Source: Octopus sinensis (taxonomy: Eukaryota). Taken from it: a stretch of 64,000 bases of DNA. Within the stretch, counting starts at the first letter, position 1. Every line of letters begins with the position of its first letter. The notes under the pieces were generated by a model. It made no database searches and was not told the DNA's origin. It worked only from the letters and a program-made list of their open reading frames with translations. Shown here piece after piece: positions 315 through 64,000 of this stretch. A program made the translations under genes and the position numbers. The stretch covers positions 108,902 through 172,901 of the forward strand of contig NW_021832532.1 in assembly GCF_006345805.1 (NCBI RefSeq), given 5' to 3'.

Positions 315-504
315 GTAAGTATTTAAACTTAAATTATCTTTTCGTGGGTTTCCATTCTTATTGAAATGAAATGGTAACAGTATAATATATATACACATTC
401 ATACACACATGTCACATCTGTAGTAAGTTCTTAAGTTTTCTATATTTATTTTATGGTTTTAAGTTGAAATTTTGTAGACCAGCCCACTCAACGGAATATT
501 GATT

Positions 505-640
505 TTAAGAAGGGCATCCAACCATAAAAACCATGCCAAAACAGCACACAGAAGCATAGCACAGGCTCCAGATTCACCAGCTCCAGTCAAACCGCCCAAC
601 CCATGCCAGCATGGTAAGAGGACATTGAACAATGTCTGTC
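505..640 (+). mobile_element. RTE-type 3' tail fragment (short non-autonomous repeat)
   Basis: agggcatcca...ccagtcaaaccgcccaacccatgccagcatgg matches copies at ~36480-36610 and ~48190-48330. Confidence 0.55.
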
Positions 641-994
641 TGGTCAAACAAATCAGTTCCTTTCTCTTTATTCTTTCTGCTTGCACCAAAAGTATATGAA
701 TTTCAATGAGAAGCTCAACTCTCACATATTTTCAAAGAAAATAATTTTGCAGTTTCTTTAGCAACAAATAGTTTGGACATGCTTTGCTAATGGCAGCAAA
801 GATATCAAGAAAAAGGGAAATATGAACTCACTTCCATACATTCACACAAACACATACTTATACATCATCATCATTTAATGTTCATTTTATTTGCTGGTAT
901 AGGCTGGACAGTTTGACAGTAAGTTCCAATGTCAACTTTGGCATAATTTCTATGGCTGGATACCCTTCCTAGTGTCAGTCACTTTACAGTGTGT

Positions 995-3729: not shown

Positions 3730-4071
3730 TTGTCCAGTGTGTGAGAGAGAATCGTGATGTGGTAGGGGAGAAATGTGTTCGCATGGATGATGGTTCACTT
3801 GCACTGAATGAGGATGCAAAGAGAGAGGTATGGAGACACCATTATGAGAAGCTGCTAAATAAGGAAAATAAATGGGATAAAGAGAGTCTGCCAAATGTCG
3901 CCCCAACAGAGGGACCAGCTATCCGAGTTGACAGTTCCTTAGTAGTTAAGGCAATTAGAAGCATGAAGACAGGGAAAGCCCCAGGCCCATCAGGTATTTC
4001 TGCAGAGATGCTTAAAATATCTGGTAGTGTCGGCTATAGCCTAGTCACCCGTATAGTTAACCAGTTTACAA
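3730..4071 (+). mobile_element. RTE ORF fragment upstream of the RT domain, truncated at ~4071
   Basis: REVWRHHYEKLLN...KAIRSMKTGKAPGPSGISAEMLK is a typical pre-RT segment. Confidence 0.8.
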
Positions 4072-4197
4072 AGGTAAAGGTGACGCACACTCCGTTGACT
4101 CAAACCTTGCTTCTATTGTGGCGAATTTACCGCCTCTGATTAGATACCTTTCATGGTCGCACCAAGACACTTTTCGAAGGTGCTTTCCGCCATGTTG
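4072..4197 (-). pseudogene. Host element E: C-terminal half of a split, degenerate L1/Tx1-like ORF1 fragment
   Basis: NMAESTFEKCLGATMKGI then (frameshift) IRGGKFATIEARFESTECASPL aligns to EKCLG...RGKKFGTVEVR in the ORF1s of units A and C. Confidence 0.75.
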
Positions 4198-7045
4198 TTT
4201 TATTATTACCCACAAGGGGCGAACATAGATGGGACAATACAATCTGATGATGGAGTCAGATACACGAATGGGTTTTACAACAAAGCGAATTTTAAAAATT
4301 TACAAAAAATTACAAAATATAAAAAATCGAATGGAGAACAGACCGGAAGACATTACGGATGGAGTGGGAGCGGGTTTAGCTCGGACCCCACGAGCCCCGC
4401 CTCCCCACTGATACTTTGGTTTCGTCTGGTTTTACATTTATGTGGTATCATCCATTCGCAACTTTCGTGCTAGATTTTTCCATCGTTCTTCATACACTCT
4501 CCTAGTCAGGCATATTCTCTCCAGCCCTATCTTCCTTTTCAGGTGAAAGATGAAATAATTCATCAACCAGGGCCGGAGATGAACTTGCCTGACTGTAAAC
4601 CTTTCATTCTCGTCTTCCATATCACCTCTTTCGCAATTGCTACTACAACGAGAAAACGAAACTTACCTTCCTTCACGAGGAAATCCGGTGGGTCAATTTT
4701 TGTAATCAACTCAGTCGACAGCTGTACTCTTCGTGTACTTGACAACAGCTGTTCGGCATAAACCCACACCTCAGACACGTCCGGACAATGAACAATAGCG
4801 TGCGGGACGGTTTCCCTATCCCGCCCGCATCTTGGACATATCGGGCTGTCTTGGCCACCGTGCCTTGCGAGTTTATCCCGAACAGGTAGAGCTCATCTGT
4901 ATTATTGCCATGCCAGAGACTTCTGGAAGTTGTCCAGTGTCTTCGGCTTGAACGTACATCGGAACAGACTGGCCAGCTGATTATCGTCGAGACCTAGGGT
5001 TTCCCCCAAGGTATCTTCACATTCCGCCTCTACCAAACCTCTATAGAAGAATGTGGTGGAACCCCCACCGCAGGCGTTGCCCGAGCGACGGAATAGCAGG
5101 AGAACCTTGCGACACTCCGTGTACCAAGTACCAAGTTTCGATCTACGATTCAGCCAGGTTTCCCATCCACCGAAACTAGTGAACTTGGGAAACATCAGTT
5201 TTGCTAGCGGAGACCTCACCGTTCACCATCCAGGTAGAGCCACAGATGTCTTAACCTCAGCGTATGTCTGCGCATCATCAGCCAAGGCATCCCTAGCCCA
5301 CCCTTTAACGGTTGTTGACAGCAAGTAGAGTGTTTCACAAGTGGTTTCCCGCCCTTCCACAAGAAGTAGAAGAGCTGTCTTTCCAACTTGATCAACCACG
5401 AATCAGGGCAAGGAACGACGGAAAGGCGGTAGGTGATAACCGATGCGATAAACACATAAGCCACCTCCTGTCACCGTCTCGTAAACCTCTATGGCCTTGC
5501 CTACTTTACGTAGGTGGTCCATTTCGGTTACAATGATGGTGATGTCATCCGCGTACGCTGACACCGATTTTCCACTACCTGGCTGTCTCGGGATACCGCT
5601 CAGTTTTCGCAGTAATGGCTCAAGAGCCATCACATACAAAAGCGGAGAAAGCGGACACCCTTGACAAGCCGACCGCTTGAACGACAGGAAGCCGTTCACC
5701 CGAACTACCGAGTCGATGTTATCGTAAATTTGTATAATCCACCTGAAGAAGCCAAGGCTCAGCCCGAACTGTACCAGGGCAGATACCAGGTAACGATGGT
5801 CGACCCTATCAAATGCTTTAGATTGGTCTAAATGGACCAGTGCCCCACCCTTGCCAGAATCGCTATTAAACCCCTCTATAGTGTACCGCATAAGATGGAG
5901 ATTATCCTGAATGGTTCTGCCAGGAACAGCACATGTCTGTGCCTCCCCGATCAGACCATCCGCGACACGCGCCAATCTTTTCGATAACACTTTGGCCAAA
6001 ATCTTCAACTCTGTGTTTAGCAGAGTGATGGGCCTGAAATTATCAATGCACTCCCCCTTGCTCGGGTCCCTTCTGACGAGTGTCACTACTCCCCGGCGCA
6101 CAGATCTGGGTATAAGCCCGTTCTGTTGCCAGTTCGCATAGACCTCCGCCAGTAGGTGCCCGAACAAGTCTGGCATACTCTTATATAACTCATAGGGTAG
6201 ACCATCCAAACCCGGCGCCTTGCCCGCGTCGCAGTCCGCCATTGCCTCAACCACCTCCTCAGGCGTGTTTGGCCCTTGACAGCCCTCCGCATCTCGCCGC
6301 GATAAGCGCGGCAGCCCGTCGAGTAGGTCCGTAAAGGCCCCCCTCCTATCCAGTCCGCCGCACTCACCGAAAAGCTGAGCGAAGTGCTCCTGAAAGGCCT
6401 CACACATCTCCTCGGGCTCGTTTATCAACTCACCTTGTGGTTCGTCATAGATCGAATCGTGGCATCGTTCCCATGCTGAGCTTCCACCACTCGGGCCCGG
6501 TTTCTTTTTATTAGGACCAACACCCCACTCCCGCCAGTAGGACTGCCAGGAGACAAAAAACACTCGTAGCCGTCAAACAGCGGGAGTAGACCTCTTGGCC
6601 CCTCTAACCGGGTTTCTGTAGCAACAATAACATCTAAATTACGCGACCTGATATCATGCAGGAAGCGACTTTGCTTCCAGCTTGCTCCCAGGCCGTGCAC
6701 ATTCAAACAACCAACATAAATGTAATCCATTACTTACCTTTATATCAGTGGTTCGGTTTTTTCTTTTTATTCTTTGTTTATCTCTTTTTCTGGGACTCGT
6801 GGGGAGTCTGACGTAGGCCCTCGAATATATATGGAGATGTTAAATCCATTCTGAGCGGGCCTACGTCATGAAAGAATTCGGACTTTATCCGCCCGTAATC
6901 CTTCCGGCCTATTCTGTAAACTATATAGTCATTCATTTTTCCTATTTTTTCCACTTTGGCCATAGCTGCCAACACACAGTATAATATAACGGAGAAAATA
7001 TACACTAAGGAAAATTGTAATAACTCACTACACACGCGATTTGCG
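4197..7045 (-). mobile_element. Array unit D: internally deleted L1/Tx1-like element
   Basis: Near-identical to unit B in ORF2; most of ORF1 is missing; deletions in EN and RT; shared 3' tail at 4198-4244; 12-bp flanking repeat ttccgccatgtt (4185-4196 / 7046-7057). Confidence 0.9.
4438..6730 (-). pseudogene. Unit D ORF2 (APE-RT), disrupted
   Basis: MDYIYVGCLNVHGL start; KAPGLDG, LDQSKAFDRVDH, QGCPLSP and YADD motifs; ends RMDDTT*. Confidence 0.88.
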
Positions 7046-7057
7046 TTCCGCCATGTT

Positions 7058-8967
7058 ATTTTATTATTACCCACAAGGGGCCAACATAGAGGGGACAATA
7101 CAATCGGGAAAATGAATAATGAATTATGAAGTTTGTACAATGTGGTGTAATGCCCACTCGATCCCCGAAATCGAGCGGTTACATTTCGTCATTTGTTTTT
7201 TATTCGTCAACAATATCTTCCAAATAAAAACATTTTACACATTTTCAACATACATTTCAAAAATTTTACAAAGTTCAACATTTTTTTTTTTTTCAGAATT
7301 TAAAGTTCCTTTTATCATTTCCAATTAAAGTTTTCACAATACCTTTTCTTTTATATATACTCCATTATCTCTACCAAATCTTGGTAAATTTCCATCGTTC
7401 GTGGCCATCTTGTAAGTCGGCATTTCATATGTTTTGTCACGTTCTTGCCAGCTGCCTCGATGAACGCCTCAGCGTCGTTCTCGTGGACGAGTGCACCTGT
7501 TTCTTTCCATTCGGTGCCCATCCTGACCCACGTATACCCATTTGTTACGTTTATTAAATCTTCCATCTCCTCACAGTGCCTGTGATGGATCAACGTTCCA
7601 TAGTATTTGAATTTTCTATTCGTACCTACGTTTTCTCTAGTTTTTCTCTTAGGACTTACTTCCTCTTTTTTCTCCTCCCTCGGTTTCTCTCTTTTCTCTT
7701 TTTGCTTTCTCTTCTTTCTTTTTCCTTCTCTTGTCTTTTTGGCTCTTTGTCTGCCGTCTCTCTACCTGTGCCTTATGTTCCTTTCCTGTTGTTTCTTTTC
7801 CTTTTCGCATACCATCTTTTCCTTTCTCTTGGTTCTGTTCCTTCTCTTGTTCTTTTCCTGCTTTTTCTCTTTCCTTTAATGTACTTTCCTTTTCTTTCTC
7901 TTGCTTCTGCCTTGGCTCCTTCTCCACTACTTCTGCACCCTGTGAATTTTGCTCCTTTTCTACTCTCTTCTTCCCTTTGTTTTCATTTTCCTTCAGTGCG
8001 CTGTTACTTCCCTTCTCTTGTTGTTTCTCCGTTATTTCCTTTTCCTTGTTTTCGCTGTTCTTTCCTTCGTGTTCGTTTTCCTTCTCTCCACTTTGTGTCT
8101 CTTTTTGCTCCGCTGTGAATTCATACAGCGGACATTCCTTTTTTATGTGCCCTCTTGATCCGCACAGGTAGCAATTCGGTTTTCTGCCCTCCACTATTAC
8201 ACTAATTGTTTTCTCGTTTTCTATTTCTATTTGGAAGGGAAACCTTTCGATGTCTTCCATTGTGGCCATCAGCCACAACTCTACTCCGAATCCCTTCCAA
8301 TTTACAACGTTCGTCTCCATGATTGACCCTATTTCAACTTCCTCCTTGCTGCCCCAATAATGGCTGTTACCAGCATTTCTGTTTTAATATCTGGGGGCAC
8401 CTTTGGGACTCTTACCCGTACCCCTCGTCTTCCTTTATACGTCGCCACATAGTGAAATTTTCGGCTTTCAGGACAGTGGAAGCCAATGAGGCCGCCACTT
8501 CCTTTGTTGCGCATCTCACCTCCACCGTACCATATTTCTTTCCTCTGTCTACAAAAGTAGCTTTTTTCATGATGTCCCCCAGACATTTCTCTATTTCTTC
8601 AATCGTCACTCTCACCAGTTTTCTCGTGTTTCTATCTTGCGTTCTATACGTTATCGTCTTGTTATTTCTCTCCTCTATTGTTTCAACAGGCGGGACCAGC
8701 TTCACGCTGTCACCCTCCCTTTTGACGAAATTCTCGTATTCCTTCAATTGTTCTTTTCTAAAGAACACTTCTCTTATTCTAAGAGACTCGTCACTTTTTG
8801 TTGTGGCGACCCCCGCGTAAGTCTCCATGACTTGCGGGTCGACACACCTTCTATAAAAGGTTCAAACACGCAGCGGCAAACGCCTCGCGCGATTCAATTT
8901 TTTTGATAATTTTTAACAGTTTTTTTTTTCAAATTTTCACATACAAAATAACTCAAACACACGTGGA
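7058..8967 (-). mobile_element. Array unit C: ORF1-only (HAL1-like) non-autonomous retroelement
   Basis: 5' UTR, one gag-like ORF, short 3' UTR and shared tail (7059-7105); no EN or RT; 17-bp flanking repeat with 1 mismatch (7041-7057 / 8968-8984). Confidence 0.85.
7351..8828 (-). CDS. Unit C ORF1-like protein (RRM-like region, CCHC knuckle, K/E coil, C-terminal domain); frameshifted
   Basis: METYAGV start; CYLCGSRGHIKKEC fits CX2CX4HX4C; split over the 8412-8828, 7649-8320 and 7351-7593 ORFs. Confidence 0.8.
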
Positions 8968-9229
8968 TTGCGTTCCGCCAGGTTGTTTTATTATTACCCA
9001 CAAGGGGCGAACATAGATGGGACAATACAATCTGATGATGGGGTCAGACACACGAATGGGTTTTTACAATAAACGAATTAAAAAATTTTCATGAAATTAC
9101 AATAAATGGACAGAAATCGAATGATGTAACAGACCGGAAGACATTACGGGTGGAGTGGGTGCGGGTTTAGCTCGGACCCCACGAGCCCCGCCTCCCCACT
9201 GATACTTTTGGTTTCGCTTGGTCTTACAT

Positions 9230-12200
9230 TTATGTTGTATCATTCACTCGCAACTTTCGTGCTACATCTTCCCAACGTTCTTCATACACTCTCCTAGTCA
9301 GGCATATTCTCTCCAGCCCTATCTTCCTTTTCAGGTGAAAGATGAAATAATTCATCAAACCAGGGCCGGAGATGAACTTGCCTGACTGTAAACCTTTCAT
9401 TCTCGTCTTCCATATCACCTCTTTCGCAATTGCTACTACAACGAGAAAACGAAACTTACCTTCCTTCACGAGGAAATCCGGTGGGTCAATTTTTGTAATC
9501 GACTCAGTCGACAGCTGTACTCTTCGTGTACCTGACAACAGCTGTTCGGCATAAACCCACACCTCAGACACGTCCGGACAATGAACAATAGCGTGCAGGA
9601 CGGTTTCCCTATCCCGCCCGCATCTTGGATATATCGGACTGTCTTGGCCACCATGCCTTGCGAGTTTATCCCGAACAGGTAGAGCTCCTCTGTAGCATTG
9701 CCATGCCAGAGACTTCTGGATGTTGTCCAGTGTCCTCGGCTTGAACGTACGTCGGAACAGACTCGCCAGCTGATTATCGTCGAGACCTAGGGTTTCCCCC
9801 AAGGTATCTTCACATTCCGCCTCTACCAACCCTCTATAGAAGAATGTGGTGGAACCCCCACCGCAGGCGTTGCCCGAGCGACGGAATAGCAGGAGAGCCT
9901 TGCGACACTCCGTGTACCAAGTACCAAGTTTCGATCTACGATTCAGCCAGGTTTCCCATCCACCGAAACTAGTGAACTTGGGAAACATCAGTTTTGCTAG
10001 CGGAGACCTCACCCGTTCACCATCCAGGTAGAGCCACAGATGTCTTAACCTCAGCGCATGTCTGCGCATCATCAGCCAAGGCATCCCTAGCCCACCCTTT
10101 AACGGTTGTTGACAGCAAGTAGAGCGTTTCACAAGTGGTTTCCCGCCCTTCCACAAGAAGTAGAAGAGCTGTCTTTCCAACTTGATCAACCACGAATCAG
10201 GGCAAGGAACGACGGAAAGGCGGTAGGTGATAACCGATGCGATAAACACATTGGCCACCTCCGCCCTCCCTTTCAGGGACAGCCACCGCCAAGACCAGGT
10301 CTTGGTTTCTGCAGCCGCCTTGCTCGATACCTCGCCCCAATTCTTCTCTATTTGGAGGTCTGGACCGAACCAGATCCCTAGCAATTTAATCGGACCCTCC
10401 GTCCAACGTTCCACGACGCTGTCAGGAGGCATCGACTTGCCTCTCCAGGTGCCGAGTTGCAAGCCGACTGACTTTTCGCGATTAACTTTTGCTCCTGTCA
10501 CCGTCTCGTAAACCTCTATGGCCTTGCCTACTTTACATAGGTGGTCCATTTCGGTTACGATGATGGTGATGTCATCCGCGTACGCTGACACTGATTTTCC
10601 ATTACCTGGCTGTCTCGGGATACCGCTCAGTTTTCGCAGTAATGGCTCTAGAGCCATCACGTACAAAAGCGGGGAGAGCGGACACCCTTGACGAACCGAG
10701 CGTTTGATTTTGAACGGCTTCGAAAAGAAGCCGTTCACCCGAACTACCGAGTCGATGTTATCATAAATTTGGATAATCCACCTGAGGAAGCCAAGGCTCA
10801 GCCCGAACTGTGCCAGGGCAGATACCAGGTAACGATGGTCGACCCTATCAAAAGCTTTAGATTGGTCTAAATGGACCAGTGCCCCACCCTTGCCAGAATC
10901 ACTATTAAACCCATCTATAGTGTACCGCATAAGATGGAGATTATCCTGAATGGTTCTGCCAGGAACGGCACATGTCTGTGCCTCCCCGATCAGACCATCC
11001 GCGACACGCGCCAATCTTTTCGATAACACTTTGGCCAAAATCTTCAACTCTGTGTTTAGCAGAGTGATGGGCCTGAAATTATCAATGCACCCCCTTGCTC
11101 GGGTCCCTTCTGACGAGTGTCACTACTCCCCGGCGCACAGATCTGGGTATAAGCCCGTTCTGTTGCCAGTTCGCATAGACCTCCGCCAGTAGGTGCCCGA
11201 ACAAGTCTGGCATACTCTTATATAACTCATAGGGTAGACCATCCAAACCCGGCGCCTTGCCCGCGCCGCAGTACGCCATTGCCTCAACCACCTCCTCAGG
11301 CGTGATTGGCCCTTCACAGCCCTCCGCATCTCGCCCCGATAAGCGCGGCAGCCCGTCGAGTAGGTCCGTAAAGGCCCCCCTCCTATCCAGTCCGCCGCAC
11401 TCACCGAAAAGCTGAGCGAAGTGCTCCTGAAAGGCCTCACACATCTCCTCGGGTTCGTTCAGCGACTCACCTTGTTGGTTCGTCAAAGATCGAGTCGTGG
11501 CATCGTTACCATGCTGTGCTTCCACCACTCGGGCCCATCTCGCGGCGTTGATTCCTTCACATCCCATATGGCGGATTCTAGCCCTGACAATGCAGCCCAT
11601 GTGTTTGGCCTCGAGGCGCTGGTTTAACACCATTCTCTTGGACGCCACCTGAGCCGCAGAGCCAGTTTTCAAGGCTTCCTCTAATTCCTTAACTAGAGTA
11701 GTCCATTCCCTCTCTAGCTACCACTACTCCTATGCTATATCTAATTGACTCAAACTTGATGGCTCGTTTGAGGGCGTACCACCATTTGTTATTAATGATG
11801 GTACCAGATCGTGCCCTCTGAATTATGTCCTAATCCGGTCTTTGTACTCCTTAATCGCCAAAAGGGACGTATTAAGTTTCCAGTAACCGGATCCTCTATT
11901 TTTAACCTTATCTATGTCAAGCTTACAAGTGACCATTTTATGATCACTGTAGCTGATCGCGTAAAACTGTGGACACTTAGCTATTTTACTGTCTACTTTT
12001 CTAATTAGTATTCTATCTAAATATGACCTGGAAGATCCGTCGCTGTTTGACCATGTCCACAATGGAGCGTTCGGAAATTCCAGCCTATAAGGATCTGCTA
12101 GCTCAAAGCGGCTTAGCAGTTCCATGAAGCCACTGTTACCTTTTCTATCTGGACGCGAGCCAACACAATCTAAATCCGCTTTGCAAATTGTGTTAAAGTC

Positions 12201-12618
12201 TCCTAGCACAACTAATGAATGCGAAGTACCAAGAAAGTTTTCTAGTTCACGGAAATAATCACTTTGCCCTGTATGGTTGGTGCGTAAATTGCAACCAGTC
12301 TGATAACTTTACCATTACTGAACGTCAAATCCATGACGACCAGCCTGCCTTCTGGATCTGCAAAAATTAACTTTTTCTCAGAAACCCGGTTTCTTTTTAT
12401 TAGGACCAACATCCCACTTCCGCCAGTAGGACTGCCAGGAGAGAAAAAACTCTCGTAGCCGTCAAACAGCGGGAGCAGACCTCTTGGCCCCTCTAACCGG
12501 GTTCTGTAGCAACAATAACATCTAAATTATGCGACCTGATATCATGCAGGAAGCGATCTTGCTTCCAGCCTGCTCCCAGGCCGCGCACATTCAAACAACC
12601 AACATAAATGCAATCCAT
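9230..12618 (-). CDS. Unit B ORF2: AP endonuclease + reverse transcriptase + C-terminal zinc motif; frameshifted
   Basis: MDCIYVGCLNVRGL, GDFN, YLDRILI, SDH, YWKLN, KAPGLDG, RQGCPLSP, YADD, PRCGRDRETVLHAIVHC. Confidence 0.92.
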
Positions 12619-12627
12619 TACTTACCT

Positions 12628-14002
12628 TTATATCAGTGGTTCGGTTTTCTCTTGTTCTTCTAACTTTTTTTCTGGGCCTCGTGGGGGAGTCTGACGTAGG
12701 CCCTCGAATATATGTGGAGATGTCACCTCCAATCTAAGTGGGCCTACGTCGTGGAAGAATTCGGATTTTATCCGCCCGTAATCCTTCCGGCCTATTCTGT
12801 AGATTACAAAGTCATTTTTCTTTTCCACTTTCTCCACTTTGGCCATAGCAGCCAACACGTTTCCTAGTCTGCTATTTGCTGCCTTTACGACCATATATGA
12901 GTCCATTGTCTCTCTCTTCTTTTAAAATTATTCTGGGAGGGGTGGTTTCCGTTTTTTTTTTTTCGGTAATTTTTTTCCACCCCTCCTCATTTATCTTATC
13001 CTCGCTCTTATTCTCCTCCGCCGCTGGTTCTGCTGTCACCGTCACCTCCACACCTTCGGTCTTCCCTTTTGGGCCGTCCGACGCTGCTTCTGGTGACACA
13101 TTTTCTTCTTTTTTTCTCTTGGCTTCGGTGCTTCCAGCGGTTTGGGGTGGGGTTGGCATTCCGCCCTTACATGACCCTTCTTGCCGCAGCCGAAGCACCT
13201 CGGCTTCCTGCCCTCCACGAAAACTGTTATTTTTTCATCTTCGCTGATTTTACCGTTTCTGGAATTTCTTCCAGTGTTTGTGCCTCCGCCTGAATGGCTA
13301 TCACTATTTTTTGTCCTTTCCAGAACTCCTCTTCTTCCACTGTGGCCTGGAGGATGTTTATTTTTTCCTCCAGGCCTACCATCACTGCTGCCACCAGACA
13401 TTCTGCATCTGCTTCTGGCGGTATGTTGTTCATTGTGATTTTTGACGTCCGCTTTCCTCTATATAATGGTAATAAAACAATGTTTTCTGCTTTGATCGTC
13501 TCCATCGATAGTTTTTTCGCCATCTCTTCAGTGGTAAAACGCACCTCCACTGTGCCGTATCTTTTTCCTCTGTTTATGTAGGTTATTTTGTCCATTATCG
13601 GTTTCAGACAAAACTCTATTTTTTTTTCCTCGATTTTCTGTATCATTCTTGTTGCTGTGTTGTAGGTTTTATATATAATTCTTTTCTTCTCTATATCGTC
13701 TTGTTTCTGTATGTTTGTGACCACAGTCACCTCTGTGCCCTCTTTCTTTACACTGTCTGCAAATTTTTCCAGATTTCCAATATTTATTGTTTTAATCTTT
13801 TTCCCAGCTACTTCAGCGAATTTTTTCGCTGGAGTTGATGCTGGTACTGGTTTTTCTATTTTCTTGGGCGACGCCGCCTCTTTTTTCTTCAGGCGACAAC
13901 GCCTCTTTTTTCCTTGGCGACAGCGCCTCTTTTTTTCCTGGCGACAACGCCGGGTATTCGTCCTCGCTCGTCACAGGCGAATAAGAGATGGGGGGACTCC
14001 AT
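12628..14002 (-). CDS. Unit B ORF1 (gag-like), several frameshifts
   Basis: RGKRYGTVEVRF and GRKPRCFGCGKKGHVRAEC; ends EPLI* at 12628; start at 14002 assumes a homopolymer frameshift. Confidence 0.8.
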
Positions 14003-14221
14003 CTTGAACAAATGGCTTTAACAAGCCTTTGGAATTCCAAATTAATTGTAGTTTTCCCCACCACGGGGGGAACACCAACGCGAAGTCCTCGCGCGAAGGC
14101 TGACTTCAGTTAAACAACAATAAACAAAACAGGTAGACAGACAATATAGAAAACAGAGATAATACTATGAGAGCAAAATATATAAACTTACTAATAAATG
14201 CAATTAGCTTGGAGCCAGGTG

Positions 14222-15987
14222 ATTTTATTATACCCACAAGGGGCGAACATAGAGGGGACAATACAATCGGGGAACTTAAAATAAGAAAGCGAATGACAAG
14301 AAAAGGAAAAAATAAAAGTAAAAAATGACATATGAAAGAATATTTACAATGAGATGTAAATGCCCACTCGATCCCCGGAATCGAGAGGTTACATTTTCGT
14401 CACATATATTTCACAATTTTTCTTTTTTCTCTTCTTTCTTCTCTCTCTTCTCACAATTCTATACATATTCCATGATAGCTTTCAATTCTCTAAAGTCCAT
14501 CACTGAGCCCTCAGGCAGCCGCTCTCTCACTCGAACACTCGTGTAAAACGTTACACTCTCTCCGGCAGCTCTGAGGAACTCAGCGACTCTTTCTTCGGGG
14601 ATTAGAGCAGTCTCCTGCCACTGATCGGTCATCCTGTTGACCCATATATGTCCCTCCGTATTACATGTCAAGTCTTTCATTTCAGGGCAGAAATGGAAGG
14701 TTACTAACTTGTAGAAGCAGTAATCTTGTTTCCGTCCTACGTTTTCCTTCATTTTTCTTTTCGGGCTTATTTCTTCCTTGTTCTCCTCTCTTTGTTTCTC
14801 TCTTTCTCTCTTTTTGCCTTCTTTTCTTTCTCCTTCTTTCTCTTGTCTTTTTGGTTCTTTGTCTGTTCTCTCTTTCTCTCGTGTTTTATGTTCCTTTTCT
14901 TTTTCTTTTTGTGTGCCATCTTTTCTTTTCGTTTGATTCTGATCTCTCTCTTGTTTTTTTCCTGTTGTTTCTTTTTCCTTTTTTTTTCCTGACTCTGTTT
15001 TGGTTCTATTTCTTTCTTTTCTTTTATTTCTTTTTCCTTCATTGACTTATTATTTCCTTTCTCTTGTTGTTTTGTTTCCTTTTCTATGTTTTCTTTTTCA
15101 TTTACCGTATTCTTCTTTTCTTCAAGTTCCTGCTCGCACTCCGCTACGAATTCGTATAACGGGCATTCTTTTTTAATGTGCCCCCTTGTCCCGCACAAGT
15201 AACAGTTTGGTTTTCTTCCCTCTACAATTACACTGAGGGTTTTTTTCATCTTCAATTTCTATTCTGTAGGGGAACCTTTCAATGTCCTCTTTTGTGGCCA
15301 TCAAACACAGTTCTACCCCATATCCTCTCCAGTTTACCGCGTTGGACTCCTTAAAGGATTCCACCTCCACTTCCTCTTCTGCTGCTCCTAGAATAGCTGT
15401 TGCCAGCCATTCTGTTTTCACTTCTGGGGGTATATTCGGGATTTTAACCCGGACCCCTCTTCTTCCCTTGTATGAGGGCCACATTATAAATTGTTCGGCT
15501 CTTAGTACAGTGGTAGCCAGTGAGGCTGCAATTTCTTCCGTTGCACATCTCACCTCCACCGTACCAAATTTCTTGCCTCTACTCACGTAGGTTGATTTCC
15601 CCATTATGTCTCCCAGACATTTTTCGATTTCGGCTATCTCCACTCTTGCCAGTTTCTTCGTATTTTTGTCTTGGGTTCTATATGTCACTGTCTTGTTTTC
15701 TTTGTCCTCTTTTGCTTTCGCGGGGGGGGGTTAGCTTCACGCTATCACCCTCCCTTTTGAAGAGCTTTTCATATTCTTTGAGTTTACTCTTCTCAAAGAA
15801 AACATCCTTCACGATTATCGATGAATCATTATTTTTTTTCCCGTGACCCCCGCGTAAGTCGCCATGACTAGAGGGTCAATTCACCTTCTTCGGAACGTTT
15901 CCACACGTGGAGGCAAACGCCTCGCGCGATAATAATCAATTTACACAGAACAAAGTTTCACTGTCTAGTCACAGATAACAACACGTA
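14222..15987 (-). mobile_element. Array unit A: ORF1-only (HAL1-like) element with an exact 17-bp TSD
   Basis: tagcttggagccaggtg at 14205-14221 and 15988-16004; shared tail at 14223-14268; no RT. Confidence 0.88.
14459..15865 (-). CDS. Unit A ORF1-like protein; frameshifts at homopolymer runs
   Basis: MATYAGV start; CYLCGTRGHIKKEC; ends IMEYV*; collinear with the unit C protein. Confidence 0.8.
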
Positions 15988-16002
15988 TAGCTTGGAGCCA
16001 GG

Positions 16003-16070
16003 TGTGAAAATCTTTTTTCTCTACATTGTATACTTTATAGACAATAGTCTTTCCTTTAATTTAATTTTTT
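16003..16070 (-). pseudogene. Host element E: N-terminal half of the split ORF1 fragment
   Basis: IKGKTIVYKVYNVEKKDFH aligns to KTVTYRTQD (A) and KRIIYKTYN (B); joins 4197 in frame. Confidence 0.7.
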
Positions 16071-16344
16071 ATTATCCATCTGGACTATTCCATTTCTGCA
16101 CGCTATTTTATTTTTAATTTATTACCATTCATGTGAAACCACTTATTCAAGTTCAAATCATTGATGCAATTTTATACCAATTGCTATTTTTACTTTTGTT
16201 ATGTTACGATTATATTATACTTCAGTTTGATTTTAATTATTACTTACTACATATATTAAATTGGTATTATTATTTTCATTGTTAAAGTGAAAGTGTCTGA
16301 CATAAAATAGAGAAACATTTTGTTTCACTTTTAACATGTAATAC

Positions 16345-16690
16345 TGATATAGTGGAGAAGATATGATATTACTATGGGCTCGCTCTAGTCAAGAAGTTGA
16401 ACATTTTTTTGCCCATGAAACTACATGGACCCTAAGTAAGGCATGTGTAAAATTTGAATGGAATTGATTGTGTAGTTCTCAAGTTTTAGGGAATCGTAGT
16501 GGAGAAGATATGATATTGCTGTAGGCTCGCCCTAGGCAAAAAGTTCAAAATGCTTTTGCTGATGACACTCCCCGGACCCTAAGTAAGGCATGTGTAAAAT
16601 TTGAATGAAATTGGTTGTGTAGTTCTCAAGTTTTAGGGAAACACACAGACAGACAGACACACATTGTCAGTTTTTTATATATAAAGATAT
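16345..16690. repeat. Two ~147-bp tandem copies followed by (CAGA)n and a TA-rich end; possible Helitron/Helentron-associated MITE
   Basis: tagtggagaagatatgatatt starts at 16350 and 16497; ends acagacagacagacacacattgtcagttttttatatataaagat. Confidence 0.5.
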
Positions 16691-16790
16691 ATATATATAT
16701 ATTATATATATATGTGTGTGTGTGAGTGTGTGTGTGTGTGTGTGTGGTGTGTGTGTGTGTGTGTGTGGTGTGTGTATGTGTTATGATGTG
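16680..16790. repeat. (TA)n/(TG)n microsatellite
   Basis: Visible directly in the sequence. Confidence 0.95.
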
Positions 16791-17254
16791 GTTATACACA
16801 TCTGGTGTGAAATGATAATATAAAAATAAATAGTTAGTTGTGGTTATCTTAAACTATCGCAGAAATATTCGTTAACACAGAATGCACTCTGTAAAACTTG
16901 AGCGTAGGTGTGATACTTGCTAGTCACTGTTAACTACCAACTGTTAAACCAACACGATCAAACTAACACTTGTCAAATACTACCTGACATTTCAATTAGT
17001 TCTTAATTATTGTTATAGATTAGTTCACCTTCTGTCATGTGGGTCTTTTCAGGTTTCTTCCATAACATTTCCCCTTTGATAGACTGCTTTGATGATGTAT
17101 CTGGATATAATTATCATCATTTAACATCCAGTTTTTATGCCAGCATTTGTTGAATAGTTTGACAGGATCTGACAAGCCATAGGACTATGGTTTCTATGGC
17201 TGGATACCCTTCTTAACACCAGCAACTTTACAGTGTGTATATGTATAGGTATAA

Positions 17255-29479: not shown

Positions 29480-32061
29480 TCCAACCCCAAAAAGTTCTAC
29501 CAAGAACTTGGCAAAAATAAAATAGAAGTCACTGCAGCACCAACGGCAGAAGAATTGGAAGAATTCTGGAGAGAAACATGGTCGGCGAACGAACAACCAA
29601 ATAAAAGGAGTATCAAAATAACAAACTCAGCATCTGAACAACTTTGGACCCCCATAACAACTGAAGAGGTCACCTAGGCACTGCAAAGACTAAGCAACTG
29701 GAAGGCACCTGGGCATGACAAGATCCCCAACTTCTGGTTGAAATATCTAACAGGAATGCACAAAAAGCTGGCTGAAAACTTTAACAGCATACTAGCAGAG
29801 CCAGAGACAATGCCTGAATGGCTCACGAAGGGGAAAACCATCTTAATTCCCAAATCAAATGAGACAGCAAAACCAGAAAACTACAGACCAATAACCTGAC
29901 TCCCTACTATGTTCAAGGCATTTACTGCAGTGATATCGCAAAGGTTGAACAAGCACCTGGACGAAAACAAACTGTTCCCAGAAGAGCAGAAAGGATGCCG
30001 CAAAGGCTCATATGGCTGTAAAGATCAACTAATGATTAATAAAGCCATAACTGAAGACAGCCACAGAAAGAAGAAAGGCCTCAGTATGGCCTGGATTGAC
30101 TACAAAAAGGCGTTTGATAGCATCCCCCACACATGGATCCTCGAAACACTAGCTATTAACAAAGTAGCACCAACAATCATAAAATTCATAGAGCACTCTA
30201 TGAATAAATGGCAAACAGTCCTACACCTCCAAACAAAAGAGGGACTCATGAAAACCAAAGACATCCCCATTAGAAGAGGAATATTCCAGGGACACACGCT
30301 CTATCCACTCCTTTTCTGCTTGGCACTGTCACCTCTATCTGATATGCTAAATAGAACTGGATGCGGATATAAATGTTATGGCAAAATGATCAGCCACCTT
30401 TTATATATGGATGACCTAAAACTATACGCTGCAAATGACAAACAGCTGGAAACACTATTAAAGACAGTTCATGGATTTACCAAAGAAATAGATATGAAAT
30501 TTGGATTAAAAAATGCGCCAAAGTAACCATGAAAAGAGGAAAACTAGTTAAGAGTAGCAACATCACACTAGATAAAACCAATGAAATAAAAGAATTAGAC
30601 CAAAGCCAAACTTACAAATACTTAGGAATCCATGAACTAGATAAGACACAACACACACAAATGAAAGAGAAAATAAAAAAAGAATATTATAGACGAGTTA
30701 GATCAATACTAAAAACAGTGCTCAATACTAAAAACAAGATAATAGGTATCAACACTTTAGCTGTCCCAGTTATAAGTTACAGCTACAATATCCTTAACTG
30801 GACACGAAATGAACTGACCAAAATAGATAGGAAAACAAGAAAAATAATGACAGGATCTAGAATGCATCACCCAAAATCTGACATAGAAAGAATATATATA
30901 CAACGTATAGAAGGTGTTAGAGGCCTTATACAGCTGGAAAACTACTATAAAATAACCACCATAGGACTGCAAAAATATCTACTTCAGAAGGAAGGAAAAC
31001 TGATACAAATAGCGGCAAAACACGAGCAAAACAAAAAACTGTTCTCAGTATTTAAGGAAGCTGACAAATGCAAACAAGAAATCATACCACCTAATAAACA
31101 TGAAGAAGAAGAAGAAGAAGCTGAAGAAACAACAAAAGCTATGAAACAAATGAAATCCAAACTAAAAATAGAACAGCAACGTACCATGATAAAACGATGG
31201 CAAGAAAAGCCCCTTCATGGTAAATACTGGACTAAACTAAACGCAAAAGAAATAGACAAAGAAAAATCCCAGCAATGGTTAAGAAGCTCAGGACTCAAAG
31301 CAGAAACAGAAGGATTTTTAATTGCAGCACAAGACCAAAGCCTCCCCACCAGAAATTACCAAAAACATGTAATGAAAAGAAATATTACAAGTAACTGCAG
31401 AATATGTGGAGATGGACAAGAAACAATAAATCATATTATCTCTAGCTGCCCAGTCCTGGCTAAGAAGGAATATATTCACAGACATGACAGAGTTGGAACC
31501 TACATACATTGGAAGCTATGCCAACATTATGGAATAACAACAGAAAAAGATGGTATAGGCACACACCAGAAAAGGTCACAGAAAATGAGAAAGCAACCAT
31601 ACTCTGGGATATGCCGATACACACAGATAGAGAAATTAAGGCCAACAGACCAGATATAGTTGTCAGAGATCATGAAGAAAAAAAATGCTTTCTAATTGAT
31701 GTATTAATACCGGCAGATGACAACGTGTCTCTAAAAGAAATGGAGAAACTCTCAAAATACAAATACCTGGAAATAGAGGTAACTAGAATGTGGAATCTGA
31801 AAACAGAAACAATTCCTATCATAGTAGGTGCATTAGGCATGATAAAAAAATATTTAGACAAATACATAACAAAAACACCAGGACATACAAACACATATAA
31901 CATACAGAAAATTTCACTACTAGGTACTGCACACATCTTACACAGAACACTTTCCATACAATAACCATCAGAGCATCACAACAAATCACAACACATACCC
32001 AAGGCACACAGAACTGCGCTCGGTAGTGAAGTGAAAGCACGCTATAAAAATAAAACTACTG
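29479..32061 (+). mobile_element. 5'-truncated R4/Dong-like RLE LINE within (AAT)n
   Basis: RT (EEQKGC, YKKAFDS, YMDDLKLY), GLKAETEGFLIAAQDQ, CRICG..ETINHIISSC, RHDRV and RPDIV RLE motifs; (AAT)n on both sides. Confidence 0.9.
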
Positions 32062-32183
32062 AATAATAATAATAATAATAATAATATTAGGGAGTATAAC
32101 TCCAAACTTACAGGGTAAAATTCAATTTAGTATTAAATCAAATTTCACAATATAAATATATAAAATATAAATCAGTGATAGAA

Positions 32184-51694: not shown

Positions 51695-53795
51695 CCCTTC
51701 ACCTTGCTAAATTTCCAGTGAGCATAATCAAAGCCATGACTTCATTGTGGACCACAATCTTGAAATTAAACACAAAATATGACTGTATTATCACTGATAG
51801 AATGCAGTATCACAAAGGCATATTCTAAGGGGACAGTCTCTCTGTGATGTTGTTTATACTTTCTGTAAACCCCTTGTCATTCATGTTAAGGAAGTTTGAA
51901 GGGTATCTCACTGATTCATGAGGAAACAGAAATATCAAAATTACACACTGTTTCTTTGTGGACAACTTAAAACTTTATGCAAAGAATACACTTGAGATGA
52001 AAAAGAGCTTTGAACTATTTACAATATTCTCAAAGGATGTAGGGTTGGAGTTTGATCAGGATAAATGTTGTTATATGGTTGTGAAAAGAGAGAAGACTGT
52101 AAACCAGACAAGTAACATCTCCAGCAATGATTTGACTGTTTCCCCTATGTCTGATGAGGAATGTTACAGGTACCTCAGGTGGAATAAAACATATCCTACA
52201 ATGACGCTTGAAACATTGATGAATGTTACAGCTGAATAAAGAAAATTTGAACCTCAGAACTCTACATTCAATAAAACAGTGGTCCACAATGTGTTTTTGG
52301 TGCCAGTATGCATACCAAAATTTGGGCTGCTTGGTTGGATGCTTGATGAGATCCAAGCCTTTGATGTGAAGACCCCAAAAATATTAACAGGCACACATAA
52401 TTTCCACATAAACTGTGATATAGATCACCTCTACCTAAAATGAAAACAAGGCAGCAGAGGCTTAACATCGATCCAAAATGTCTTTGAATGTCATATCATA
52501 TCCCTTCAGCAACATCTTTTAACAACCAAGTGTTGAAGTGCATCCCTTGACCAAGTTTGCGTACTTGAGGCTGATAACATCATAAAGCAGCTCCATGAGC
52601 AATATTCCTTGTCTGATAACCTTAAATTATCATGCCCAAAGAAGTTGCATGACACTACTGTAATGTATCATTAGATGAAAGGATGATCATATATGAGCAG
52701 AAGACTATGCATGGATATGTTAGTAGAAATCTCTGTGATGATAGTAACATTGATCATCAAAGCAGTCTGTCATGGACTAATAGCTGGATTACTACCTCCC
52801 ACTTTGAAGAGTATGTATTTGCAATCCAGGAACAGGAAATATAAACTAAATACCTATTTCTTTACTACCCACAAGGGGCTAAACACAGAAGACAAACAAG
52901 GACAGACAAACAGATTAAGGCGATTATATCGACCCCAGTGCGTAACTGGTACTTATTTAATCGACCCCGAAAGGATGAAAGGCAAAGTCGACCTCGGCGG
53001 AATTTGAACTCAGAACGTAGCGGCAGATGAAATACTGCTAAGAATTTCGCCCGGCGTGCTAACGATTCTGCCAGCTCACCGCCTTATAAACTAAATACCT
53101 GATGCATAAAAGGGATACAGATGCAGGAAACCAGTAAAATGTGACAATCGATGCAGAATTTATGAATATATTACCCACATCATAAGCAGCTGTCCAAAAG
53201 TATCGTCACAGTATTATCTACCAATGAGACATGATGTTATAGCTAGAACACTATGTAATGAAATCCTTCAGAAGGATAACCCCAAGGACAAAGAAATAAG
53301 AACCTACAGCATAGTACAAGCCATAGCCACTCAAAATAAAAAGAAGTACTGATGGAATGTCTCAGTAAAAACCTCAAAAAATGTAAGCACAACAGACCTG
53401 ATATAATGATTTGGGTAGAGAAGAGAAATTGTGTGCAGTTGTGGAAATTAACTCTCCAGCGGATGTTAACATAAAGCTGAAGATCAGTGAGAAAGAAAAC
53501 ACCTATGCTGAACTATTAAGAAATCTGCATTGATTCTATCCATATTACAAGTTCAGATTTATACCTGTAATTATTGGGGCTTGTGATATGTAACACACTG
53601 CCTAAATACCAACCTTGAGAAATTAGGCTTCTCAAAATGAGAAAGGTGAAAGCTAATTCGAAGACTACAGATCCACTCCATCACTGGAACTGTAAAAATC
53701 TGTAAAACTTACCAGAAGTTTATCATTGAAATATATATGAGCATGTCAAGATATGCAACTATATGCATGAGAATACATACATAAAACATACAAAT
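51695..53795 (+). mobile_element. RLE-type (R4/Dong-like) LINE, degraded, interrupted by a SINE
   Basis: KGIF*GDSLS, VDNLKLYA, MHGYV and HFEEYVFAIQEQ; same family as 20975-21720. Confidence 0.78.
52856..53084 (-). mobile_element. Full-length tRNA-derived SINE with 16-bp TSD and Tx1-like tail
   Basis: TSD tataaactaaatacct at 52840-52855 and 53085-53100; head ggcggtgagctggcagaa; box B-like gagttcaaattcc. Confidence 0.92.
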
Positions 53796-63422: not shown

Positions 63423-63859
63423 ATAGTTGGCTTTTAAACATTACTGCAAAAGATAATGATAAGACAAGTCCATTCAATCGGGTGAACTTCCGTCTAAAAA
63501 CACAAACCAGTGTCTTTCGCATAAATTCAGAGGATGGAAGTATTTTTCTCAGCAGTAAATTAAACCATGAAGATAAATCCTTTTACAATCTCACCGTTCT
63601 TGCCACTGACGGAGGAACTCCATCTAAAACAGCCACTACTGAAGTAAATGTCATTGTAGAAGACGTTAATGATGAAACACCAGAACTGATACTGGGTAAA
63701 ACAAATATAGAACTTTATGAAAACATAACCGTTAATTCTTATATTACTTCAATAAAAGCTACAGACAAGGACTTGAATAGTAAGCTGATTTTCAATATTT
63801 CACAAGAGACAATTGAAATAAATGGAAAAGGAAGAGAAGTCAATAAAAATACTATCGTG
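63423..63859 (+). CDS. Cadherin-repeat gene, exon 12 (gene continues beyond window)
   Basis: ttgcAG/GTAAGA; phase 1/0; AKDNDK, LNHEDK, ATDGG, EDVNDETP and ATDKD motifs. Confidence 0.94.
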
Positions 63860-64000
63860 GTAAGACATTTTTGGATTTTTTTGCTTGAAATAGAACTTGT
63901 TTTTCAGAATGTTTAGCAAAGTTTTTATGGCCTACTTCTCACTAATTTTTATATTTTTCAAATTCAAAACACTTGCATAGTTGGAGTGTATTTTACAGCC

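What the first reader, a model, noticed from the sequence alone, without database searches (positions are those of the whole stretch)
4185..16004. Stack of four L1/Tx1-like retroelements inserted serially at one site
Seen: units D (4197-7045), C (7058-8967), B (8985-14213) and A (14222-15987) lie head-to-tail on the minus strand with no spacer. Each ends in the same tail (+ strand ttttattattacccacaaggggc.aacataga.gggacaatacaatc). The right boundary of each unit repeats its own left flank: D ttccgccatgtt (12 bp exact), C ttgcgttccgcca[t/g]gtt (17 bp, 1 mismatch), B gccaggt (7 bp), A tagcttggagccaggtg (17 bp exact). A's head matches neighbour B rather than its closer relative C, which favours TSDs over family-conserved 5' ends. 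Established: Tx1-clade APE elements can be sequence-specific (Xenopus Tx1L into the Tx1D transposon; Keno into U2 snRNA), and target-primed reverse transcription creates TSDs. Inference: each insertion rebuilds the site GCCA[T/G]GT(T)G|TGAAAATC on its 5' side, so autonomous and non-autonomous members keep piling up there.
Basis: partly seen in the sequence, partly recalled or inferred. Interest (0 to 1): 0.92.

Follow-up and report, generated by a model that had tools for sequence, protein, structure and literature searches.

The report
Octopus LINE stack in a Helitron-like repeat
Four retrotransposons of one octopus L1/Tx1-type family sit head-to-tail because each inserted at the same nick in a repeated, Helitron-like host sequence and rebuilt that site; this is real and recurs at seven or more other loci, but it is a new example of behaviour already known for Tx1-type elements.

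Summary
Four minus-strand units, D, C, B and A, share a 47-nt 3' tail, and each is bracketed by its own direct repeat of 7-17 nt.

The repeats are target-site duplications, not 5' UTR. In seven further Octopus vulgaris loci the repeat sequence follows the locus, while the element body follows its subfamily.

The stack's flanks are not unique DNA. They are the two halves of a ~1.2-kb non-coding repeat, here called H, which has Helitron-like ends:
- Five loci, including the window, are split at exactly the same position (..GATTTGAAC|ACATGGAGGAAAGC..).
- Three loci are split at the equivalent position of a deletion form of H.

Stacks hold 2 to at least 9 units. A B- or D-type unit lies next to the downstream half of H in all six loci where that end was read (the L005 and L007 stacks are interrupted before it), with ORF1-only A/C units upstream.

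Nested duplications give the window order D, then C, then B, then A. B copies at different loci are 99.5% identical while their H hosts are about 94-97% identical, so the insertions were independent and came after H had diverged. One intact autonomous copy exists (ORF1 324 aa; ORF2 1129 aa with APE, RT and zf-RVT).

The closest precedents are Tx1L in Tx1D and crocodilian Tx1/SINEU-3 in Mariner-N4_AMi. I class this as a new member of a known kind. Which bases direct the nick remains open.

The parts
4085..4197 (-). Downstream half of the host repeat H, cut to 113 nt in this copy. Its first bases (sense ACATGGCGGAA, + strand 4185-4195) are the original target copy retained 3' of unit D.
   Evidence: It is 94% identical to L002 19761-19873 and L006 16298-16409. 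In L002, L003 and L006 the homology continues to about 515 nt.
4198..7045 (-). Unit D: a B-lineage element with three internal deletions (no ORF1, gapped APE/RT) and a C-like 5' UTR. It is the oldest insertion.
   Evidence: block structure. D is 95-96% identical to all B copies, against 98-99.5% among the B copies themselves. The 11-13-nt duplication matches the start of H-down.
7041..7058 (-). Junction between C and D: the duplicated target (sense ACATGGCGGAACGCAA), which includes 5 nt of D's 5' end.
7059..8967 (-). Unit C: an ORF1-only non-autonomous element (RRM-like region by eye, CCHC knuckle by Pfam, Lys/Glu-rich tract) with a broken frame.
   Evidence: It is 92-95% identical to the C units in L008 and L009.
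8968..8985 (-). Junction between B and C: the upstream copy of C's duplication, carrying an A-to-C change that the B and A duplications then inherit.
8986..14204 (-). Unit B: a full-length (5.2 kb) autonomous-type element with ORF1 (RRM-like region and a CCHC knuckle, both read by eye) and ORF2 (APE, RT, zf-RVT). It is inactivated by several frameshifts and stops.
   Evidence: Pfam; ORF map. It is 95% identical over its full length to the intact L006 copy.
14205..14222 (-). Junction between A and B: the downstream copy of A's 16-17-nt duplication. It consists of 7 nt of target plus B's own 5' end, CTCCAAGCTA.
14223..15987 (-). Unit A: an ORF1-only non-autonomous element and the youngest insertion. 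Its frame is broken.
   Evidence: 98% identical to O. vulgaris proteins. It is 97.9% identical to L006_A.
15988..16004 (-). Upstream copy of A's duplication. This is the rebuilt target at the 5' edge of the stack.
16005..16687 (-). Upstream half of the host repeat H, containing a 147-bp internal tandem duplication. Its 5' end is A|TCTTTATATA.. next to (TA)n.
   Evidence: It is 90% identical to L006 8625-9291 and about 95% identical over its last 239 nt to five other loci.

Best explanation
The window comes from an octopus, either O. vulgaris or a close relative. It holds one copy of a ~1.2-kb non-coding repeat, H, whose termini look like those of a non-autonomous Helitron.

A family of L1/Tx1-group LINEs, together with ORF1-only satellite elements that share its 47-nt 3' tail, inserts by target-primed reverse transcription at a fixed position in H. 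In the element's sense strand that position reads ..GAAGATTTGAAC|ACATGGAGGAAAGC...

The proposed mechanism is as follows:
1. The bottom strand is nicked at the bar.
2. The top strand is cut 7-19 nt downstream, most often 16-17 nt.
3. The stretch between the two cuts is therefore duplicated on both sides of the new copy.
4. The upstream flank plus the upstream duplicate restore the nick site at the 5' edge of the newcomer, so the next element uses the same nick.
5. The next duplication then takes in a few bases of the resident element's 5' end.

In this window the order was D, then C, then B, then A.

Shown here: the anatomy, the nested duplications, the recurrence at the same host position in other loci, and the independence of the insertions.

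Inferred: the strand-nicking steps (from the established target-primed reverse transcription model), that the shared tail is the RT recognition signal, and that the specificity lies mainly in the H sequence upstream of the nick.
For: Anatomy and duplications.

Domains: B has APE, RT and zf-RVT. An intact relative, L006_B, has ORF1 of 324 aa and ORF2 of 1129 aa with APE, RT and zf-RVT.

The same host and the same nick recur:
- L002: Hup | A x4 | B | Hdn.
- L003: at least 8 A | B | Hdn.
- L006: Hup | A | B | Hdn.
- L007: Hup | A x3 | B.
- L005, L008 and L009: Hup joined to Hdn position ~307, with C/A units and a B-type unit.
- Together with the window these lie on at least 5 chromosomes of GCA_951406725.2.

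The heads track the locus and the bodies track the subfamily. L007_A1 is 98.3% identical to L002_A2 but 92% identical to its own neighbours L007_A2 and A3, yet it carries the L007 head.

The insertions are independent and post-date H divergence. B 3' halves are 99.5% identical between L002 and L006, while their H halves are 94.1% (Hup) and 96.6% (Hdn) identical. B 5' junctions differ between loci: AGGAAATCAA, CTCCAAGCTA and TCTGAAATCAA.

Order of arrival: A's duplication contains B-specific bases and C's contains D-specific bases. A single A-to-C change in C's upstream copy is inherited by the B and A duplications. D is the most diverged B-lineage copy.

Family habit: the Argonauta hians relative has a 17-bp duplication, and the SINE that shares the tail core has a 15-bp duplication.

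Precedent: Tx1/SINEU-3 in Mariner-N4_AMi, with a 16-bp TSD and tandem copies sandwiching a TSD (PMC4494074).
Against: - The loci were found through A/C-type ORF1 proteins, so the 8-of-9 association with H is an ascertained sample, not a census.
- No empty H copy was seen, so the fraction of H copies that are filled is unknown.
- The bases around the nick show no strong shared motif across targets: GAAC|ACAT, TAAC|ATTC, GTAG|CAGA.
- Two elements of related families reuse one nick inside a SINE copy (L004). Sequence specificity for H therefore cannot be the whole reason for stacking.
- Some neighbouring A units are 99.0-99.4% identical with identical heads. They could be local tandem duplications rather than separate insertions.
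- L002 and L003, and L005, L008 and L009, share junction types. Some loci may therefore be copies of one another.
Confidence: 0.8

Rival explanations
1. The repeated heads are conserved 5'-terminal sequence of the elements (5' UTR) rather than target-site duplications. The units would then simply abut.
For: The C and D heads are nearly identical and are followed by related 5' UTR sequence. B heads at different loci resemble each other, and part of each head (CTCCAAGCTA or ..AATCAA) is indeed carried by B itself.
Against: - A-type units with 98% identical bodies carry different heads in different loci, each matching the local neighbours.
- In L005, L008 and L009 the heads are ATTCCAGTCT.., which is internal H sequence.
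- In L004 the heads are SINE sequence.
- The Argonauta relative has a different 17-bp repeat.
Confidence: 0.03
2. Hitchhiking. One or a few insertions into H were then multiplied along with H, either by Helitron transposition or by segmental duplication. The recurrence would then not reflect target choice.
For: L002 and L003 share the B junction and the A-head variants. L005, L008 and L009 share the Hup-to-Hdn307 join and the C head ATTCCAGTCTTCATTGA. A B-type unit lies next to H-down in every locus where that end was read.
Against: - Stack compositions differ at every locus.
- There are at least three different B 5' junctions at site 1 and three different B-type 5' ends at site 2.
- B copies are 99.5% identical against 94-97% for their hosts.
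- The same young A subfamily sits at the 5' end of the stacks in L002 and L007.
- In the window, B sits 5' of C and D rather than next to H-down.
Confidence: 0.12
3. Concerted insertion. The stack was laid down in one episode, with successive particles priming from the not-yet-sealed nick left at the 5' junction of the previous insertion, or by template jumping. Nick reuse would then need no sequence specificity.
For: - Two different ORF1-only elements reuse one nick inside a SINE copy (L004).
- Tandem SINE copies with the same tail core occur in L006 and L010, but their insertion order and origin are ambiguous.
- The whole L002 stack must be younger than its B copy, which is still 99.5% identical to L006_B.
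- Mismatches between duplicate copies could be polymerase errors.
Against: - Each duplication has its own length and reaches into double-stranded 5' sequence of the resident element.
- D is clearly more diverged than B.
- The positional gradient of subfamilies repeats across loci.
- Simple template jumping would leave no duplicated target between units.
Confidence: 0.1
4. The long, homogeneous A arrays grew at least partly by unequal crossing-over or tandem duplication of an [A + junction] unit, not by separate insertions.
For: L002_A1 and A2 are 99.0% identical, and L007_A2 and A3 are 99.4% identical with identical heads. L003 has at least 8 units with a period of about 1780 nt. In the L010 SINE array the junctions share their right end, not their left end, as expected for duplication of a unit.
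Against: This cannot explain mixed stacks such as A|B|C|D in the window. Arrays also contain units only 92-96% identical to each other, some of which have closer relatives at other loci.
Confidence: 0.3
5. The stack is an assembly artefact: collapsed or mis-joined repeats.
For: None was found. Repeat-rich regions are generally prone to such errors.
Against: The four units are all different, so they cannot be collapsed copies. The junctions are precise. The same architecture occurs at seven or more loci of an independent chromosome-level assembly.
Confidence: 0.01

Closest known systems
Crocodilian Tx1 LINEs and SINEU-3 targeting Mariner-N4_AMi (Kojima 2015, PMC4494074)
   Same: - Retroposons mobilised by APE-type L1/Tx1-group LINEs insert at one position of an abundant DNA transposon.
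- The TSD is about 16 bp.
- Tandem copies 'sandwich a TSD' and are attributed to sequential insertion.
- Copies of different families are stacked on one another.

   Different: - Here the host looks like a non-autonomous Helitron, not a mariner.
- The non-autonomous partners are 1.8-1.9-kb ORF1-coding elements rather than snRNA-headed SINEs.
- Stacks reach at least 9 units.
- The animal is a cephalopod.
- Two positions, or a deletion form, of the host are used.
Xenopus Tx1L inserted in the Tx1D transposon (composite Tx1 elements)
   Same: A LINE that resides at a specific site inside a DNA-transposon-like repeat, giving composite elements.
   Different: As I recall, Tx1L makes a short (4-bp) duplication and is not described as forming long head-to-tail stacks. 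Its relationship to the octopus family was not tested.
R1 elements of insect rDNA and their tandem arrays
   Same: An APE-type, site-specific LINE whose 14-bp target duplication allows the site to be reused. Tandem R1 arrays separated by short 28S segments are known in Drosophila (own knowledge).
   Different: The target is a functional multicopy gene and the clade is different. There is no ORF1-only satellite partner.
HAL1 ('half-L1') elements of mammals
   Same: Non-autonomous LINE derivatives that keep only an ORF1-type gene and presumably depend on a partner's ORF2 protein. Units A and C fit this description and share the partner's 3' tail.
   Different: HAL1 elements are dispersed and not site-specific. 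There is no sequence relationship.
Stringent-type LINE/SINE pairs with a shared 3' tail (eel UnaL2/UnaSINE1)
   Same: LINE, ORF1-only elements and a SINE share a conserved 3' end with a small hairpin followed by an A-rich end. The pairing is kept between octopus (CCC/GGG) and Argonauta (GCC/GGC).
   Different: The hairpin has only 4 bp and there is one compensatory change in 10 sequences. Recognition by the RT is inferred, not shown.

Membership tests
L1 group of non-LTR retrotransposons (L1/Tx1) | ORF2 with an N-terminal APE-type endonuclease followed by a reverse transcriptase | tested here: met
   Pfam gives Exo_endo_phos 1.8e-11 and RVT_1 2.5e-31 in the intact L006 ORF2. Fragments of both are present in window unit B.
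L1 group of non-LTR retrotransposons (L1/Tx1) | C-terminal Cys/His zinc-binding motif after the RT | tested here: met
   Pfam zf-RVT: 1.3e-06 in window B and 1.5e-08 in L006.
L1 group of non-LTR retrotransposons (L1/Tx1) | A separate ORF1 encoding a nucleic-acid-binding protein (RRM and/or CCHC knuckle) | tested here: met
   Pfam zf-CCHC in window unit C's ORF1 and in the L006 A unit. CFGCGKKGHVRAEC is read directly in B's ORF1. The RRM-like part was judged by eye only, with no Pfam hit.
Tx1 clade specifically | RT phylogeny places the element with Tx1 and Keno rather than with L1 proper | not tested
O. vulgaris repeat annotation lists 13 'L1-Tx1' families (PMC13282606), but that paper does not link them to this family.
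Tx1 clade specifically | Target-specific insertion into a repeated sequence | tested here: met
   8 of 9 octopus loci holding A, B, C or D relatives are in H at one of two positions. The sample is ascertained through ORF1 proteins and is not a census.
Target-primed reverse transcription insertions | Direct repeats of target DNA flank each copy and differ between insertion sites | tested here: met
   The heads are locus-specific: ACATGG.. (H site 1), ATTCCAG.. (H site 2), CAGAAACG.. (a SINE) and TATTTTTAAAATTTGTA (Argonauta).
Helitron (host repeat H, non-autonomous) | 5'-TC and 3'-CTRR termini, a GC-rich hairpin about 10 nt before the 3' end, insertion between host A and T, and no TSD | tested here: inconclusive
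   Three 5' ends read A|TCTTTATA... Three 3' ends read GACCCG-GCAACGA-CGGGTC-TTT(A/G)ATG-CTAG|T. However, most copies lie in (TA)n, which makes A|T flanks uninformative. No Rep/Hel partner was looked for.
HAL1-like ORF1-only non-autonomous LINE (units A and C) | Encodes only an ORF1-type protein and shares the 3' end of an autonomous partner | tested here: met
   An intact 379-381-aa ORF with a CCHC knuckle is present in L002_A1, L006_A and L007_A1. No RT or APE is present. The 47-53-nt tail is shared with B and D.

The most novel reading that the evidence does not exclude
Nick reuse may not be explained by endonuclease sequence specificity at all. A resident copy, or the H sequence just upstream of the nick, may itself recruit the next particle to its 5' junction. 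Possible routes are local reinsertion of nascent transcripts or a DNA-binding activity that reads H-up and cuts at a fixed distance. Any first insertion would then seed a growing head-to-tail array. This would account for reuse of one nick at unrelated sequences (H site 1, H site 2 and a SINE copy in L004) and for arrays of at least 9 units.
Probability: 0.15. Interest if true: 0.8.

Novelty: new member of a known kind. Interest (0 to 1): 0.55.

Why it matters
This is a clear invertebrate (cephalopod) case of an APE-type LINE with strong target preference for another transposon. An intact autonomous copy and an ORF1-only partner are available for study.

Such systems show how retrotransposons find 'safe harbours' and how target-site duplication alone can turn one site into a growing array. 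They also explain a class of tandem-looking repeats that annotation pipelines may merge or misclassify in the very repeat-rich octopus genomes.

Site-specific LINEs are also of practical interest as insertion tools, as the current work on R2 shows. An APE-type enzyme with a defined nick position would be a different starting point.

The basic phenomenon is already documented in Xenopus and crocodilians, so this extends a known principle rather than changing it.

Tried and rejected
**Searches that found nothing**
- Rfam at gathering threshold on the whole window gave no hit. A permissive scan of 4000-16800 found no ribozyme, snRNA, rRNA or tRNA at the junctions, only (TA)n noise. So the target is not a known RNA gene, and there is no sign of a 5' self-cleaving ribozyme.
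- ARAGORN found no tRNA gene.
- A search for the tail in JGI metagenome contigs gave 0 hits.
- Exact look-up of eight window ORFs in the protein collection found none, so the window's own assembly could not be located.

**Searches of limited use**
- The RT protein search gave only 58-61% relatives (Argonauta hians and unnamed contigs) and no O. vulgaris model. B-type loci could therefore be reached only through neighbouring A/C ORF1 proteins.
- No empty H copy was found in the window or in the fetched loci.

**Models considered and rejected**
- 'Tail homing', meaning new insertions added 3' of a resident tail. This is rejected because A's and C's duplications contain bases from the 5' ends of B and D.
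- H-up as a fifth retroelement inserted at the same nick. This is rejected because no copy of the duplicated target lies upstream of it.

**Technical note**
- When two encoding-contig runs were issued together, the second locus (L003, L005) was not written to the script folder. Those two loci were therefore analysed only with pattern searches and sequence reads.

Full report
**1. The observation**

The tail motif occurs at 4198, 7059 and 8986. A copy with a 1-nt deletion lies at 14223. A diverged copy at 52857 belongs to an unrelated SINE. None were expected by chance.

BLAST of the four minus-strand units against the window shows:
- D is B with three internal deletions, at about 95% identity. 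Its first 83 nt are not in B and resemble C's 5' UTR.
- A and C are 71% identical.
- The two lineages share only the last 47-53 nt.

Pfam finds RVT_1 and zf-RVT, plus a weak APE match, in B fragments, and a CCHC knuckle in C's ORF1. All four units have broken frames.

Read on the element strand, the junctions are:
- ..GATTTTCAC|ACCTGGCTCCAAGCTA|[A]..AAAATC
- |ACCTGGCTCCAAGCTA|[B]..AAAACA
- |ACCTGGCGGAACGCAA|[C]..AAAATA
- |ACATGGCGGAACGCAA|[D]..AAAACA
- |ACATGGCGGAA|AGCACC..

**2. Organism**

The RT's best relatives are Argonauta hians (57%) and a cuttlefish. A's ORF1 is 98% identical to annotated Octopus vulgaris proteins. The window is therefore from O. vulgaris or a very close relative. Its own ORFs are not in the protein collection.

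**3. Other loci**

I used the O. vulgaris ORF1 proteins as handles and fetched nine loci of assembly GCA_951406725.2.

The window's flanks turned out to be the two halves of a repeat, H. Window 16005-16687 (H-up) and 4085-4197 (H-down, truncated here) match the flanks of similar stacks elsewhere.

| Locus | Layout |
|---|---|
| L002 | Hup \| A x4 \| B \| Hdn |
| L003 | at least 8 A \| B \| Hdn |
| L006 | Hup \| A \| B \| Hdn |
| L007 | Hup \| A x3 \| B (interrupted) |
| L005 | Hup \| A/C-like \| A \| C \| D-like B (interrupted) |
| L008 | Hup \| C \| B-variant \| Hdn 307-517 |
| L009 | Hup \| C x2 \| B-variant \| Hdn 307-517 |

In L002, L003, L006, L007 and the window the break in H is at the same nucleotide (..GAAGATTTGAAC|ACATGGAGGAAAGCACC..).

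In L005, L008 and L009, H-up is joined about 7 nt after GAAGA to H-down position ~307 (..GCTAAC|ATTCCAGTCTGTTATAT..). This is either a deletion form of H or a second site. The stack sits at the equivalent distance from H-up.

H is about 680 + 515 nt and has no ORF. It starts A|TCTTTATA.. and ends with the hairpin GACCCG-7 nt-CGGGTC followed by ..CTAG|T, usually inside (TA)n. These are Helitron hallmarks, but the evidence is limited to three or four copies.

**4. Duplications, not UTR**

The heads differ between loci and match the local neighbours:
- CTCCAAGCTA-type in the window and L006.
- TCTGAAATC-type in L007.
- AGGAAAT-type in L002 and L003.
- ATTCCAGTCT-type in L005, L008 and L009.

The bodies group by subfamily across loci. 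L007_A1 is 98.3% identical to L002_A2 but only 92% identical to L007_A2 and A3.

A more distant pair of ORF1-only elements (L004) is stacked inside a SINE copy, with the SINE's own sequence duplicated: CAGAAACGT.., 15 and 19 nt. The Argonauta relative is flanked by a 17-bp AT-rich repeat.

The duplication length is 7-19 nt and most often 16-17 nt.

**5. Order and independence**

A's duplication contains CTCCAAGCTA. This is B's own 5' end, because it is also present on L006_B, which abuts H-down directly. C's duplication contains CGCAA from D. So each newcomer entered on the 5' side of the resident element.

An A-to-C change in C's upstream copy is inherited by the B and A duplications. The most economical order is therefore D, C, B, A.

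D is the most diverged B-lineage copy, at 95-96% against 98-99.5% among the B copies.

B copies at L002 and L006 are 99.5% identical, while their H hosts are 94.1% and 96.6% identical. B 5' junctions also differ between loci. B therefore entered H copies that had already diverged.

Some loci may still be copies of each other (L002 with L003; L005, L008 and L009). Some near-identical neighbouring A units (99.0-99.4%) may be local duplications.

**6. Activity**

L006_B is intact, with ORF1 of 324 aa and ORF2 of 1129 aa carrying APE, RT and zf-RVT. Several A units keep a 379-381-aa ORF with a CCHC knuckle. The family therefore was, or is, recently active, even though the window's four units are dead.

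**7. The shared tail**

Ten tails were aligned: window units A, B and C, the window SINE, four elements from O. vulgaris loci, and two Argonauta tails. All keep a 4-bp hairpin before an A-rich end, with one compensatory change, CG to GC. This is thin evidence. It is compatible with a 'stringent' RT that recognises its own 3' end, which would explain why ORF1-only elements and a SINE carry the same tail.

**8. What is not settled**

The bases at the nick show little in common across the three kinds of target, and the sequence downstream of the nick can be entirely different (site 2). Recognition may therefore lie in H-up, or reuse of a nick may be favoured by the resident copy itself.

Tandem SINE copies with the same tail core occur in L006 and L010. 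They are ambiguous as to insertion order and may be unit duplications.

No ribozyme or RNA gene is detectable at the junctions.

**9. Comparison with what is known**

Kojima (2015) described crocodilian SINEU-3 and Tx1 elements that insert at one position of Mariner-N4_AMi with a 16-bp TSD. They are often in tandem 'sandwiching a TSD', and copies of different families flank one another. He excluded hitchhiking by analysing truncated copies (PMC4494074). Tx1L in Tx1D is the classical case.

The recent O. vulgaris repeat annotation lists 13 L1-Tx1 families and 8 Helitron families but says nothing about target specificity (PMC13282606). A full-text search for octopus together with target-specific non-LTR elements found nothing.

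**10. Verdict**

It gains a concrete target (H) and independent replicate loci. It is a new member of a known kind of system. It is of solid interest to transposon biologists and to anyone annotating cephalopod genomes, but it is not a new principle.

Noticed in passing
window 52857-53085 (minus strand): A SINE of about 230 nt with a tRNA-like head by eye (ARAGORN calls no tRNA). Its 3' end, GCCCCTTGTGGGTAGTAAAGAAA, shares the tail core of the stacked LINE family. It is flanked by a 15-bp duplication, AGGTATTTAGTTTAT, at a site unrelated to H. It is a solo copy.
   Followed up: partly
window 29909-32090 (+ strand): Another LINE, with RVT_1 and zf-RVT by Pfam, that is only distantly related to unit B. 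It ends in a (TAA)n run, as (TAA)n-associated LINEs do. It is not stacked.
   Followed up: partly
window 63371-63916 (+); also about 190-320: An ORF with a Pfam Cadherin domain (3e-18). A cadherin-like exon by eye lies near the start of the window. The stack may therefore sit within or beside a (proto)cadherin gene region.
   Followed up: partly
window 3741-4095 (+ strand): An N-terminal RT fragment of an unrelated LINE (..KAIRSMKTGKAPGPSGISAEMLK.., then VYKGKGDA in another frame) abuts the point where this copy of H-down is cut off at 113 nt.
   Followed up: partly
window 16350-16640: A 147-bp tandem duplication inside H-up (87.5% identity between the copies). A similar duplication is present in the L006, L007 and L008 copies of H.
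   Followed up: partly
L004 8600-12310: Two different ORF1-only elements (X 8615-10262, Y 10282-12284) are stacked at one nick inside a SINE copy. The SINE sequence CAGAAACGT.. is duplicated, 15 and 19 nt. Each upstream copy carries a base change that the next duplication inherits.
   Followed up: yes
L006 about 490-930 (minus strand); L010 17380-18330: Tandem SINE copies with the same tail core: a pair in L006 separated by 23- and 32-nt repeats of flank, and four copies plus an X-like element in L010. In L010 the junction repeats share their right end rather than their left end, which looks more like duplication of a unit than repeated insertion.
   Followed up: partly
L005, L008, L009 (H-up joined to H-down position ~307): A form of H lacks about 300 nt between the usual insertion site and an internal sequence, GCTAACA|ATTCCAGTCT. 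It is unclear whether this is a deletion subfamily of H, a second target site with an associated deletion, or whether the 300 nt is itself an old insertion.
   Followed up: partly
L001 6885-12650 (Argonauta hians): A full-length relative is followed by about 130 nt of other sequence and a second copy of its last ~250 nt. The whole is enclosed by a single 17-bp duplication, as if two templates were copied in one insertion event.
   Followed up: no
L007 8436-8563: The last ~130 nt of H, in inverted orientation, lie about 40 bp upstream of the 5' end of the H copy that holds the stack.
   Followed up: no
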